A DNA stretch of 64,000 nt from Saccostrea cucullata (lineage: Eukaryota): the NCBI RefSeq assembly GCF_032062105.1, contig NW_026933693.1:248001-312000 (forward strand). The letters are read 5' to 3'. Made by a program: the position numbers and the translations under genes. The notes below the pieces were generated by a model. The model was not told the origin of the DNA, did not search any database, and saw nothing but the letters and a program-made list of their open reading frames with translations. Shown piece by piece: positions 26,870 through 32,800 of this stretch; the first letter of the stretch is position 1, and each line of letters opens with the position of its first letter.

Positions 26870-29800
26870 CTAATCATCAGCCATCTCACGCCTACGTCTT
26901 CTCCTCCTCTCCGCAGCACTCTCTACCTCTGTGGAATCTGCGTCTTCCTTGGCCTTCCTCTCCTCGCGGCGTCTGCGGCGGCGTTCCTCCAGACTGTCCT
27001 CGGCCGGTTCTGAGGCTGTCTCGGCAGCTTCCTTTGCCTCTCTTTCTTTCCTCCTCCTCCTTCTTCTGGCCTCCATTGAGTCATCATCTTCATCTTCCTC
27101 CTGAGCTGCCTTTGTTTCTGGCACCGGGCTTGGTTCCTTTGGCTCCTCCACAACTGCTGGTTTCTTCTTCTTACCAATATCATCATCATCTTTACCAATC
27201 TGTGCCCAAAAATCTACTTCTTCTTCCTTCTCCTCAGTTTTTGCCTCCTCTTTCACTTCTTCTTTGGGTGGTTCCTCTTCCTTGACTGGCTCTTGCTCCT
27301 CTTTGGCTGGTTCCTCCTCCTTGACAGGTTCTGGCTCTTTGACTGGTTCCTCTTCCTTGACTGGTTCCTCTACCTTGACTGGTTCTGGTTCCTCTTTAGC
27401 TGGTTCCTCTTCCTTTACTGGTTCATCCTCTTTAGTTTCTTTGACATCCTTTTAAATGCATAAAAAATCTTTAAATACTGGACAATGATTTAGGTCACTG
27501 ATACTTCTACACAATACTTTTAGAATTTGCCTCTAATCTGATTGAAAACCCAAATAAAATGTTATTTTGGCCCACTAAATCACAAAATAAATAGAACCTT
27601 GAGGAACTTTATATCTTACATCAGGTTGAGAAACTGCCTCCTCTTTTTCCTGGCGGGTGAAAATTAAGTCAATGACATCAGAAAAATAGTACCTTTACAA
27701 AGGCTACCATAAATTGAAATAATTGCATTTCCAATTTTCAGATTTTAATTTTAAGAAACTGTTTAATTGCCACAACTTGGATTTTGGAAAAAGACATCTG
27801 TATACTCTGACAATCTAAATCCACACAGATTCAACTCTACTAGACATTTATCAAATAAAAGAGACACATAGAAATCACACCATGCCACTTACGACAACCT
27901 GTCTTCATCAGAACTGCTGGCTTAGTTGCCTACCATTACAGAAGGAATTTTTTTCCCCATTTTTGATTATGAACAAATGTAAATCATACAAACAAAATCA
28001 GTACTGATTAGTACACAAACTGTACAAATTTACTATACCATTCTTCACTTAATATACACAGAAACGTAACATATAAATCAAAGCAAAAGTCCTACATTAA
28101 CACTCAATGCATTCCCAATCTGAGCTACAATTTCAACTTCCTATTTTGTCAGTCATTGTTTTATTGAACTTCACTTCATGCATGCCATTCAAAGGCACAA
28201 GTACATGCAACCCTCTTACACTAAAAAGGAGATTCTTAAACCAGAACTTCAATATGTACCTCTCTTAATAAATAATAATGTTTTTATTCATGTCATCAGT
28301 CACTTACATTATCTTCTGTTATTATAAGTGCTCCAGTTTCCTGTCAACAGTTTTAAAATGTTCACTGAACACAAATACAATGTAACAAAGTCAAAATAAC
28401 AAGCATTATCCACTAAGAATTTAAATTACTTCCTTTATTCAGTACAACACAATCCTTCTCATCTTTCTTTTTTTGTTTTCATCTGCCTTTAACTTTCACC
28501 CCCACACCCACCCACCCCCCTTAAAGGGAGTAAACAATAGTTTTACTATGAGTAACAGAACCTATAGATTCCCCAGTATGAATACTAGCCTAATCACTTA
28601 CTTCAGATTTCTCCTCTACAGATGTTTCCTGTAACAAGCAACATATCCAATCATCAGCGAGACTGATAATATAAGTATTTCTCTTTAAACAATCTTCCTC
28701 CCCTTTTTTTACTCAAACACTACCAGCAACTATCATTAGGTTTACTTTGCTTTATTATGTGTACTCCTATCTGAAATCAAATAATTTTGGCTAACCCTTT
28801 CTTTACAGTTTTCTGAAAACTGATACCGTTATTTTTTTTTTTTTTTTTTACATCAAAGTTACGGACACCTTAATCATGCCTACTATAGTGTCTTGCTACC
28901 AAAACATTTCACCCCAAATCAGTCCACTTACTTCAGAAGGTGCTGCATCTTGCTTTGTTTCCTAGTACAGTAAAACACAAAGCAAATTATTCATGCTGTC
29001 CAACATCAAGTTTTCTAAGCTTCACTGACTTTGCAAATGCCAAAAAAACCCCCCAAAAACAAGCATTTACTTGTTTTCGGAAATTAACTTCACAATTTAA
29101 AAATAATCTCCAAAACTGGCATGCCACTTACAGCTGTTTCTTCTTTGTCTACCTCCTCAGTTTCCTATCATAAAATGTTAACCTTGTAACTCAATACATG
29201 CAGCTTAGCTTGCAGCTCAACTTTTATTCACAACTTTGTAACTTAATTTCCAGTTTACAAAAAAGCTGGATAAAATCCAACAAACTTACAACATCATCCA
29301 AGACAAGAACAGCCTCTGCGTCCGTTTCTTTGCCATCCTAAAAATCAGCGACCAATAATCATGCCATGTGTGACCAAGCTATATAGCAAACAGCAGTTAA
29401 TAACACTATTAAATAAATCAAATATCAAGACCTTGTTCACTTACATCAGTTGCCACAACAACAGTTTCTTCTGCAGCCTGGTCACTTTCCTAGCATAGGT
29501 ACAATATTCATGTATTTCAAATGGAATAAGACTACAAACAGCGACATAGCTCTACTTGAGCATGGTTAAAATATACATTTACAATACTGCATTACATGTA
29601 GCTAGAAAGTTTACAACCACTAACTTCAGTTAGCAATTTCTATTTTTCGTTCAACTAAAACCAATGACCTGTAGGACATAACTTACTTCTGTCTTGACCT
29701 CTGATTTTTCTCCCTACAACAACAAATCAATGACCACTTTACAGTATAACCTGTACAACTATTAATCCCTACTGGTATATCTCATAAAGAAAGCACTAAA

Positions 29801-32800
29801 TAACTAGCCATTCCCTGAGCAGTAGGAACCACACACCATGCTACTTACAGGAGGTGGCACCTCTGTAGCAGATTGGTCCGTTTCCTGCCAACAACAGACA
29901 CAGAGAAATATAACTATCATTTTACTTTACAGCCATACATGTATATACACGGACAAGTTAGATGACTCACACTATGTAGACTCCACTAAACTTCAAAGAT
30001 TTTTAGAAACATCTAGACACAACTCACATGCAAGCCAACTTACATCAGCATCAGTAGTTTCAGTCTCTTTTATATCCTGACAACAAATACATGTGTATGG
30101 TGTACAATCTTCATCAAATCTAATACATCATTTACCAACTGCATTGCAAATTACATCTCCTAGTTTTTTCCCCTCTTCTTAAAAATCTCATGAATACGAA
30201 AAATTTTCCACACAAAAATTTCTCAAGTTAGTTAAAATTTCCTTTGAATCACTTTAGGTTCATAAAAGTGAGTAATTGATTTCTTTTTTTTTTTAAACCT
30301 ACAGAATTTACCTTTGTTTCCTCTGCATCTTTGTCCAATGGTTTCTCCTGTGAGAAGATAAATACAAAATCAACAAGGAAACATTAATGCTGAAGCTGTA
30401 TCCTTTAGAATTCTTGTGAAAAGAGATTTTTATGTTGATTTTCCAAATAATATCTTTGCTGATCAGATCATGCTGTTAGTTCACAAAAACTTTCCTGGTG
30501 TATAATCTTCTAGTACAGTGTATCTATATGTGTCTCACTTGTGTAGCATTTTTTTTAAGCTCAATTATGGAATGTTAGATTCTGGTACTAGGGTATTTAG
30601 AGGGACACCCCATGCTCAAGTAAGAAAAGGTTTCCTCCAGCAAGTGATTATTACTCACTTCTTTCTGACTACATATAAATAGAAGACTGTGTACAGGTAA
30701 AAGTGACCAATTACTTCCTTTTTACAGTGGTTTGTCACAAACATTGTGTTCTCTGGGAGATCGATCTGACTTCTGACATACAATGTAGAAACATCACACC
30801 ATGCAAGGAGTTCTGATTTCTCTATGGCAGCAAAAAAGTGGTTTGAGGTAGAAAATCTCTTTGAATTCTACACTGCAATTTCACAAAAGGAACATTTCAC
30901 ATTCAAAGAGTAAAACTCAAGTTTCTAATTTCACTCAGTGTTGCAGTTCTTCAAGAAAGACTGTAGAGGGATTTTCTTCACACCATGCTACTAAAGGAGG
31001 TGTGGATCAAATTTCTTTCACTACAGTTGCAATGTGGATGACATTGATAAACCCACTCCATGCACATTTCTATTAAAAGAGGGAGTGGATCAAAGTTCTT
31101 CTGTTATGGCAATGGGACATCATCCCCTCAACCCATGCCTGCTATACCTCCTCTTCTTTCCTTGCTTCCTCATTCTCTTCCTTTACATCTCCTCCTGCCT
31201 TCTCATCAGCACCCTCTGGTGGTGACCCCTCCTCTTTTGAGTCACCCTCTGACCTTTCACCTTCCACCTTATCCTCTGATGGTACAGCCTCTTTTTCACT
31301 TGTCTCCTGATCAGCTTTCTCTCCTGTTTCTGCTTTTTCCTCCTCATTTTTCTTTGCATCTTCAGCAGCAACATCCTCAATCAAAACAGCTTTTTCCTAC
31401 AGTTTATCATTCATCACAAACTATTAACCATTTAAATGATAAATGTGTACTTTAATGTTTAAGCTTTTCCCCCATCCTACTACAATTTTGGATATTCTAG
31501 TTCTTTATATACAAGCATTTGAAATAATACTGTTAGTAAAATGCAAAATTTCCAATTATTAAAAAAATATCAAAATACTTAAGTATATATAAACTCCTGT
31601 AAAACTTTTTAACTAACTGCACATCTCTTCCACCAATCACACCCAATGGATTAAAACTGTACTACCGGTATATACTAATTTTGGTACACTTTTTTTTTAA
31701 CTTAACAAAATTAAAAATTAAAATAGTAAGTGTTTTTAAATTTTACAGCATCTTGTTCTAAGTGACAGTTTCAAAACAACTGAACGAGTAAGGACATAAT
31801 AACTAACAAGTGATCATCAGAATCGTGATTGGTGGACGAGAAGACCTATGAACTCTACAGGTCATGCCCATGCTCCAATACCTCATCCTCCTTCTCTCTT
31901 TCATCCTGTATAAACACAATATCAAGTTATCACCCAGGGGTTTTTTGTTCCCAAACAATATTGATTTATCATCCAAGTTCTTTGCATTGACAATATAAAT
32001 CCAGCACCAGATTTTAGGTATACATTTACAATATCTTATAATTAGAATACTTTTTCAGAAATTTTCATTTGAATCCATCAACCTTTCTTTTAACGCATTT
32101 CTGTTCATTCCATATTCATATAACGTCCTAAATTCTCTTGAAATAAACGAATGATAATACACTAACAGTTAATGTGATAATGCAAAGGGAATAAATTGGT
32201 GACAAACTGCTGCAAAGTAACTCTTAGTTTAGTAATAAATAATCAGTCATTTATTTTTATGAGTGCATACTGCATATATAGTTTTAAATATGAGCAAAAC
32301 TTATTTTTAGTGTAATTATACGAGGCAGTCTGTTCAAGAAAAATTCATGATGAGTAATTGTAAAGTTGCTTGTGCTAAATGCCTTTTCTTCTTGAAAAAT
32401 AAATACCTTCAGAGCTTCTAAAATGTGTTGAAAGCTCTAAAGCTAACTCAAGAGAATAAGAGCTTGATGAGTATGCACTTATAAAAGAAATGACTTCTGA
32501 ACTTTGAACTCCATGCCCATGCTGGTATACCTCATCTTTCTTTTCTTCTTCTTCCTGATAAACATGGGAGACCAAGACATTTTTAGAGTCTTAACTATAA
32601 TAATGGTATCCTTATCTCTAACTTATTAGCAAAAAATATTTTTTTATCATCTTAATACATGTTAGATGACTTGGAACCACAGCCACCATTGTAAGAATGT
32701 GTTGATTATGTAATACAGAACCAATCATAAGGACTGCTGGAAACATTCATTTTATAAATTGATGTGAATATTTACCCCTGTCACTGTAACAGATGCCTGA

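What the first reader, a model, noticed from the sequence alone, without database searches (positions are those of the whole stretch)
28602..32554. Array of 11 frame-preserving microexons building a modular acidic tail on SH3BGR
Seen: after the SH3BGR domain, the - strand carries 11 tiny purine-rich segments, each bounded by AG and GT, each starting with G, each a multiple of 3 in phase 0 and free of stops. They are 32554-32531 EEEEKKDE (24 nt), 31905-31882 DEREKEDE (24), 30347-30312 EKPLDKDAEETK (36), 30076-30044 DIKETETTDAD (33), 29884-29849 ETDQSATEVPPP (36), 29713-29687 GEKSEVKTE (27), 29489-29445 ESDQAAEETVVVATD (45), 29337-29290 DGKETDAEAVLVLDDV (48), 29164-29132 ETEEVDKEETA (33), 28961-28932 ETKQDAAPSE (30) and 28628-28602 ETSVEEKSE (27). 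There is also a 249-nt phase-0 cassette at 31396-31148. The microexons are too short for the ORF track to resolve as a gene. Inference: any subset can be skipped without a frameshift (up to 2^12 combinations in principle), giving a disordered spacer tunable in length and charge. This resembles troponin T N-terminal or titin PEVK splicing. Vertebrate SH3BGR is muscle/heart enriched, so muscle-type-specific isoforms (e.g. striated versus catch adductor) are plausible.
Basis: partly seen in the sequence, partly recalled or inferred. Interest (0 to 1): 0.85.

Follow-up and report, generated by a model that had tools for sequence, protein, structure and literature searches.

The report
Spliced acidic tail on oyster SH3BGR
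An oyster actin-binding gene makes either a short protein or long versions with an acidic tail built from 13 tiny optional exons; the exons are real and fish genes are built the same way, but the splicing signals beside them are conserved across bivalves and point to a muscle-type switch that has not been described.

Summary
The exons are real. All 11 listed segments and the 249-nt cassette are as described. A blind filter finds the 13 where about 0.3 are expected. RNA contigs from a close relative support 12 of the 13; another oyster's transcript supports the last. Three runs show only short forms; one run shows the long tail, with skipping at both ends and the middle exons as one block, so 2^12 free combinations are not supported. 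GCATG (Rbfox-type) motifs sit just downstream of the donors (21 sense, 3 antisense), four as GCATGGTGTG, resembling the nematode Fox-1/SUP-12 muscle element. The same placement occurs in pearl oyster and freshwater mussel orthologues. The architecture is not unique: cavefish sh3bgr has a cassette plus eight phase-0 micro-exons, and RefSeq lists up to 40 isoforms in fish. Best reading: a regulated short/long switch on an actin pointed-end capping domain, probably in muscle (tissue untested). The scan noted the GCATG motifs before on this same stretch, not on other DNA.

The parts
35421..35465 (-). Coding exon 1 (15 codons, start codon), head-to-head with an LCA5/lebercilin gene
   Evidence: Sequence; matches the N-terminus of other oyster transcripts P0155 and L011; lebercilin hit at 42631-43137
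33164..33349 (-). Exon 2, core of the SH3BGR thioredoxin-fold domain with the PLPPQVF motif
   Evidence: PF04908 E=6e-17; best solved relative 8IAH chain Z, E=1.5e-11
32776..32880 (-). Exon 3, end of the domain; last constitutive exon before the array
   Evidence: Joint 33163-32879 in all 4 runs
32531..32554 (-). Micro-exon 1 (24 nt); orthologue in pearl oyster and freshwater mussel; two GCATG at +9 and +15
   Evidence: Joints in X6 and X11
31882..31905 (-). Micro-exon 2 (24 nt), tandem duplicate of micro-exon 1 with its flanks
   Evidence: Flank similarity z=16; skipped in the X6 joint shown; included in another oyster's transcripts
31148..31396 (-). 249-nt phase-0 cassette with a short motif (IED/E..A.E) shared with other bivalves
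   Evidence: Joints on both sides in X6; similar motif in P0011, P0123 and L007
30312..30347 (-). Micro-exon 3 (36 nt); orthologues begin EKP in pearl oyster and freshwater mussel
30044..30076 (-). Micro-exon 4 (33 nt), TGCATG at +13
29849..29884 (-). Micro-exon 5 (36 nt), GCATGGTGTG at +8
29687..29713 (-). Micro-exon 6 (27 nt)
   Evidence: 26 letters between joint 29848-29489 map here
29445..29489 (-). Micro-exon 7 (45 nt)
29290..29337 (-). Micro-exon 8 (48 nt); joins micro-exon 9 or directly the long exon
29132..29164 (-). Micro-exon 9 (33 nt), GCATG at +8; mostly joined straight to the long exon
   Evidence: Joints 29131-27447 and 29131-28960
28932..28961 (-). Micro-exon 10 (30 nt), minor inclusion
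28602..28628 (-). Micro-exon 11 (27 nt), minor inclusion
28308..28340 (-).
   Evidence: Joint into 28340 in X6
27893..27929 (-). 37-nt off-frame candidate exon with a strong donor followed by GCATGGTGTG; probably decayed or a frame-shifting exon
   Evidence: no RNA joint among those shown
27620..27649 (-).
   Evidence: Joint 27619-27447 in X6
26870..27448 (-). Long exon (192 codons and stop): E/K/P repeats, then three Arg/Glu-rich repeats predicted as a helix; the stop abuts a possible donor with TGCATG about 10 nt downstream
   Evidence: Three joints into it in X6; last 76 aa 57% identical to the pearl oyster exon, with the same stop-donor-TGCATG layout; model helix 124-191
25386..25406 (-). 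Short last exon (GKSEDE and stop) of the 118-134 aa forms
   Evidence: Loose ends of X1, X6 and X11 match 25376-25405 exactly; P0244, P0247
30979..30988 (-). Intronic GCATGGTGTG downstream of the cassette
30795..30804 (-). Intronic GCATGGTGTG downstream of the cassette
25789..25794 (-). AATAAA between the long exon and the short last exon: possible poly(A) signal of the long form
   Evidence: use not tested

Best explanation
This is the oyster's tailed SH3BGR-family gene. By default exon 3 splices to the short last exon, giving a 118-aa protein like vertebrate SH3BGRL (shown in RNA). In some cell type, most likely muscle (inferred), an Rbfox protein, probably helped by an RBM24/38 (SUP-12-like) protein, binds GCAUG(GUGUG) just downstream of the donors and switches on the cassette, a block of micro-exons and the long exon (motifs shown; binding inferred). 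This gives a protein of about 480 aa (length inferred by chaining joints): the thioredoxin fold, a long acidic low-complexity spacer and a conserved Arg/Glu helical end. Skipping at the two ends of the block trims the spacer by 8-60 aa (shown). The fold most likely caps actin filament pointed ends, as human SH3BGRL proteins do (inferred by homology); the tail probably spaces or tethers it to a partner in the contractile apparatus (inferred). The array grew by tandem duplication of an exon together with its donor and motif (flank similarity shown), which explains the uniform phase and first base.
For: Junction paths and a long form in only 1 of 4 runs. GCATG 21 sense versus 3 antisense; 7 of 15 alternative donors have it within 30 nt (binomial P about 1e-8) and none of exons 1-3 do. 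GCATGGTGTG four times, all sense, 0.07 expected in the window; 990 in the 1.17-Gb genome; the only two donor-linked copies in the genome are here. Same donor-proximal motifs in Sinanodonta (4 of 6 small exons, one with the full composite) and Pinctada. Downstream (U)GCAUG enhances inclusion, and Fox-1 plus SUP-12 bind UGCAUG and GUGUG in nematode muscle (PMC2777236). Pointed-end capping and muscle-specific tailed SH3BGR (PMC12827327). Duplication signal.
Against: Tissue of the runs is unknown. Only contigs of a relative 90-95% alike were laid, so levels and full paths are not measured. Motif copies within the oyster array are not independent (duplication). Motifs at +8 abut the U1 site and could repress rather than enhance; the nematode composite represses from an upstream position. 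Rbfox is also neuronal. Fish sh3bgr has no GCATG excess (25 sense, 25 antisense). An Rbfox gene was not found in this genome, though that search was uninformative. No partner or function of the tail is known.
Confidence: 0.6

Rival explanations
1. Freely combinatorial tail: each micro-exon is chosen independently, giving hundreds of isoforms that tune length and charge by muscle type.
For: All exons are phase 0; at least seven junction paths seen; 18 cavefish RefSeq isoforms use many subsets of 8 micro-exons.
Against: Micro-exons 3-7 show only consecutive joints at one contig depth in X6, and three runs lack the long tail. RefSeq short-read models can enumerate combinations that were never seen whole (general knowledge).
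Confidence: 0.12
2. Regulated switch, but neural rather than muscular: Rbfox in ganglia includes the exons.
For: Downstream GCAUG marks brain as well as muscle exons; SH3BGRL proteins occur in the neuronal periodic skeleton.
Against: The GUGUG half is a muscle (SUP-12) signature in nematodes; the long form is abundant in X6; vertebrate tailed SH3BGR is heart and skeletal muscle specific; no excess of UGC before the acceptors.
Confidence: 0.13
3. Only the short/long switch matters; the number and sequence of the micro-exons is tolerated drift in a disordered spacer, spread by tandem duplication.
For: Counts differ by lineage: 13 here, about 6 in Sinanodonta, 2 found in Pinctada; tails do not align; one copy is off-frame; duplicated acceptors lie beside Pinctada micro-exon 1.
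Against: All 13 keep frame and intact splice sites, RNA of a relative 5-10% diverged uses the same exons, and micro-exons 1 and 3 and the cassette are kept across distant bivalves. This rival is compatible with the regulatory part of the best explanation.
Confidence: 0.15

Closest known systems
Teleost sh3bgr (e.g. Astyanax mexicanus XP_049332787; Siniperca chuatsi isoforms X1-X40; Conger conger)
   Same: Same domain followed by one larger cassette and a run of phase-0 micro-exons (eight of 24-30 nt in Astyanax) encoding an acidic tail, used in many annotated combinations. Differential exon use reported in charr muscle for a gene with at least 18 exons (PMC8653899).
   Different: Tail sequences do not align; the oyster has 13 micro-exons, a 192-codon exon with an Arg/Glu helix, and strong donor-proximal GCATG enrichment, which the fish locus lacks.
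Human SH3BGR / SH3BGRL / SH3BGRL2 (thioredoxin-fold pointed-end capping proteins)
   Same: PF04908 domain, PLPPQ[IV]F motif, no CXXC, lebercilin-family neighbour; tailed and tail-less forms exist.
   Different: In humans tailed and tail-less proteins come from separate genes; here one gene makes both by splicing.
C. elegans egl-15 Fox-1/ASD-1 + SUP-12 element (UGCAUG + GUGUG)
   Same: Adjacent GCATG and GTGTG stretches in introns next to regulated exons.
   Different: In egl-15 it lies upstream and represses; here it lies just downstream of donors, the enhancing position for Rbfox. Binding untested.
Schistosome micro-exon genes (MEGs)
   Same: A long run of very short coding exons with alternative splicing.
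   Different: MEGs are secreted, parasite-specific and built almost wholly from micro-exons; this is a cytosolic conserved domain with an appended tail.
Troponin T N-terminal variable region; titin PEVK; h-/l-caldesmon
   Same: Muscle proteins with spliced acidic or extended spacers (from general knowledge; caldesmon in PMC9561149).
   Different: No sequence homology found; analogy only.

Membership tests
SH3BGR family (PF04908) | Thioredoxin-like SH3BGR domain above the Pfam cut-off | tested here: met
   62 bits versus cut-off 21 for exon 2
SH3BGR family (PF04908) | PLPPQ[IV]F motif and no CXXC | tested here: met
SH3BGR family (PF04908) | Binds and caps actin pointed ends | not testable with these tools
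   Shown for human SH3BGRL proteins only
Tailed SH3BGR (vertebrate type) | Glu-rich C-terminal extension from phase-0 alternative small exons | tested here: met
   fish layout
Tailed SH3BGR (vertebrate type) | Heart and skeletal muscle-specific expression of the tailed form | tested here: inconclusive
   Long form in 1 of 4 runs; tissues hidden
Tailed SH3BGR (vertebrate type) | Tail homologous to the vertebrate tail | tested here: inconclusive
   Same position after exon 3 and same phase, but no alignable sequence
Rbfox-regulated cassette exons | (U)GCAUG enriched in the proximal downstream intron and conserved in orthologues | tested here: met
Rbfox-regulated cassette exons | Inclusion depends on Rbfox binding | not testable with these tools
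   Needs CLIP, knock-down or a minigene; PF12414 search uninformative
Neural SRRM3/4-type micro-exons | 3-27 nt length with UGC shortly upstream of the acceptor | tested here: not met
   Only 4 of 13 are 27 nt or shorter; about 3 of 13 have UGC near the acceptor; no strand excess
Schistosome MEG family | Secreted protein with signal peptide, mostly encoded by micro-exons | tested here: not met
   N-terminus is the SH3BGR domain; micro-exons encode 142 of at most 529 aa
Caldesmon | Caldesmon domain homology | tested here: not met
   No Pfam, PDB or atlas match for the long exon

The most novel reading that the evidence does not exclude
A splicing switch between tail-less and tailed SH3BGR is ancestral to bilaterians and was later partitioned among the vertebrate paralogues. 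In bivalves it is run by the same Rbfox + SUP-12/RBM24 composite code as nematode muscle, and the long form is a new kind of thin-filament pointed-end cap that reaches through a tunable acidic spacer to a conserved Arg/Glu helix binding the thick filament, with different spacer lengths in striated and catch muscle.
Probability: 0.15. Interest if true: 0.72.

Novelty: new member of a known kind. Interest (0 to 1): 0.42.

Why it matters
It gives a compact natural test bed for muscle-type splicing in molluscs, where little is described: 15 optional exons in 5 kb with a conserved cis-element. It also bears on what the acidic tail of SH3BGR does, now that the domain is known as an actin pointed-end cap; one gene supplies tail-less and tailed forms for direct comparison. 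The micro-exon architecture by itself is not surprising, since fish genes show it in routine annotation.

Tried and rejected
The long exon had no homologue by word search, atlas features, PDB or Pfam; pairwise BLASTP to the pearl oyster exon failed on composition, and the match was seen only by aligning the last 76 aa. PF12414 (Fox-1 C-terminus) found nothing and its control was silent. A first donor-plus-motif pattern had the wrong spacing. Six contig look-ups returned nothing (in part). No paper describing SH3BGR micro-exons, or SH3BGR in bivalve muscle, was found; one wanted paper was not held. Chance origin rejected. Constitutive inclusion rejected. No family tree was built: the vertebrate tail-less paralogues were not fetched and the domain is short. 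The single read-laying run could not cover 26870-25406, so splicing of the long exon onto the last exon is untested. The caldesmon resemblance of the Arg-rich repeats is from memory and found no support in searches.
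Full report
Observation. The minus strand carries an SH3BGR-family gene: exon 1 at 35465-35421, exon 2 at 33349-33164 (PF04908, E=6e-17; nearest solved chain 8IAH_Z) and exon 3 at 32880-32776. All 11 listed segments and the 249-nt cassette have the stated ends, phase and open frame. Two more in-frame micro-exons lie at 28340-28308 and 27649-27620, and a 37-nt off-frame candidate at 27929-27893. A blind filter recovers the 13 against 0 on the opposite strand, 0-1 in 53 kb elsewhere and 0.27 in simulations. Beyond the array are a 192-codon exon ending in a stop (27448-26870) and a short last exon at 25406-25386. The genome (1.17 Gb) has one other family member, a tail-less paralogue. The closest proteins are 84-89% identical in exon 2; from these and the bivalve hits I infer an oyster, species not determined.

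RNA evidence. Four runs from four studies were laid on 27330-33300. They are contigs 90-95% alike to the window, so they come from a relative, and their tissues are hidden. All join exon 2 to exon 3. In X1 exon 3 runs on into letters that match 25376-25405 exactly: the whole array is skipped, giving 118 aa. X11 includes only micro-exon 1 before that exon. X2 shows two low-depth joints among micro-exons 3-5 and next to no cover of the long exon. X6 shows both the short form and the long tail: exon 3 to micro-exon 1, micro-exon 1 to the cassette (skipping 2), the cassette to 3, then 3-4-5-6-7 at one shared contig depth, 8 to 9, and three different entries into the long exon (from 8, from 9, from 13), plus a minor path 9-10-11-12. 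The strongest long path chains to about 481 aa, but no single contig spans it. Transcripts of another oyster give exon 3 to last exon, plus micro-exon 1, and plus micro-exons 1 and 2. So alternative use is shown, the main choice is short versus long, and variation is seen at the edges of a central block. Contigs hide rare variants, and 3 joints and 16 loose ends were not displayed.

Regulatory signal. GCATG occurs 21 times on the sense strand of the array and 3 times antisense; 7 of 15 alternative donors have it within 30 nt, mostly at +8 to +15, and exons 1-3 have none. GCATGGTGTG occurs four times, all sense, against 0.07 expected; the genome has 990 copies and its only two copies right behind a GTAAGT donor are in this gene. 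Downstream (U)GCAUG is the enhancing position for Fox-1 proteins, and UGCAUG next to GUGUG is the element bound by Fox-1/ASD-1 with muscle-specific SUP-12 in C. elegans (PMC2777236). Part of the excess comes from duplication: micro-exons 1 and 2 and the cassette end share flanks (z=16, 8), as do several others. Independent support comes from orthologues. In the freshwater mussel Sinanodonta (L007, also head-to-head with lebercilin) six annotated phase-0 exons of 27-51 nt follow exon 3; four have GCATG within 30 nt of the donor, one as the full composite. In Pinctada (L010) orthologues of micro-exons 1 and 3 carry GCATG within 25 nt, and the long exon ends, as here, in a stop directly followed by a donor-like GT and TGCATG.

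The protein. Human SH3BGRL proteins cap actin pointed ends through this fold, and the tailed member SH3BGR is heart and skeletal muscle specific and needed for sarcomere organisation (PMC12827327). The micro-exons add net negative, low-complexity pieces of 8-16 aa. The long exon's first 120 aa model as disordered and its last 70 as a helix (pLDDT 73-96, single sequence); that end is 57% identical in Pinctada while the rest is not alignable, so it is the best candidate for a binding site. No homologue outside these bivalves was found. What it binds is unknown; a thick-filament partner is a guess.

Comparison. The architecture is not peculiar to oysters. Cavefish sh3bgr has a 171-nt cassette and eight phase-0 micro-exons of 24-30 nt, used in many subsets by 18 RefSeq isoforms mapped here. 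Siniperca has isoforms up to X40 and Conger up to X16 with 7-9 aa modules, and differential exon use is reported in charr (PMC8653899). Acidic tails occur in 18 of 47 complete-domain representatives, including annelid, brachiopod and cephalopod proteins. The fish locus lacks the GCATG excess. The human SH3BGR locus also neighbours LCA5L, so the oyster gene is probably the co-orthologue of the vertebrate tailed and tail-less genes (inference; no tree). Whether the spliced tail is ancestral or convergent is open. I found no paper describing these micro-exons.

Verdict. A real, alternatively spliced micro-exon array; a new member of a kind already present in vertebrate annotation. The most valuable addition is the conserved donor-proximal Rbfox-type code and the conserved helical end of the long form. 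The joined spliced protein was left out of all searches, which were made exon by exon. Interest 0.42.

Noticed in passing
L011:505-1900: A transcript contig of another oyster joins micro-exon 2 straight to the downstream Kazal-repeat gene (the neighbour at about 20500-14000 on the minus strand of the window): read-through splicing or an assembly chimera.
   Followed up: no
window 27929-27893: Off-frame 37-nt exon-like segment that keeps a perfect donor and the composite motif; a decayed copy or a frame-shifting exon.
   Followed up: partly
window 35465-37300: SH3BGR and LCA5 (lebercilin) are head-to-head, sharing a short upstream region; same neighbour in Sinanodonta (L007) and at the human SH3BGR locus.
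   Followed up: partly
window 34930-34688: A second promoter-like stretch (TGACGTCA, CpG-rich) and a short exon-like segment with a GTAAGT donor in intron 1; possibly an alternative non-coding first exon.
   Followed up: no
L010:13440-13657: Pinctada has three tandem copies of the acceptor and start of micro-exon 1; the two upstream copies would give 20-nt off-frame segments. Looks like duplication in progress.
   Followed up: no
L010:18778-20107: The Pinctada long exon is split over shifted frames in this assembly and the annotated protein P0011 ends before the conserved Arg/Glu end; probably assembly or annotation error.
   Followed up: partly
L007:30379-31332: An unannotated acidic open frame of about 300 codons in the Sinanodonta gene, at the position and with the motif of the oyster cassette.
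   Followed up: partly
window 37329-37510: Tandem copies of an LCA5 exon end with its donor (also noted as s1-722197).
   Followed up: no
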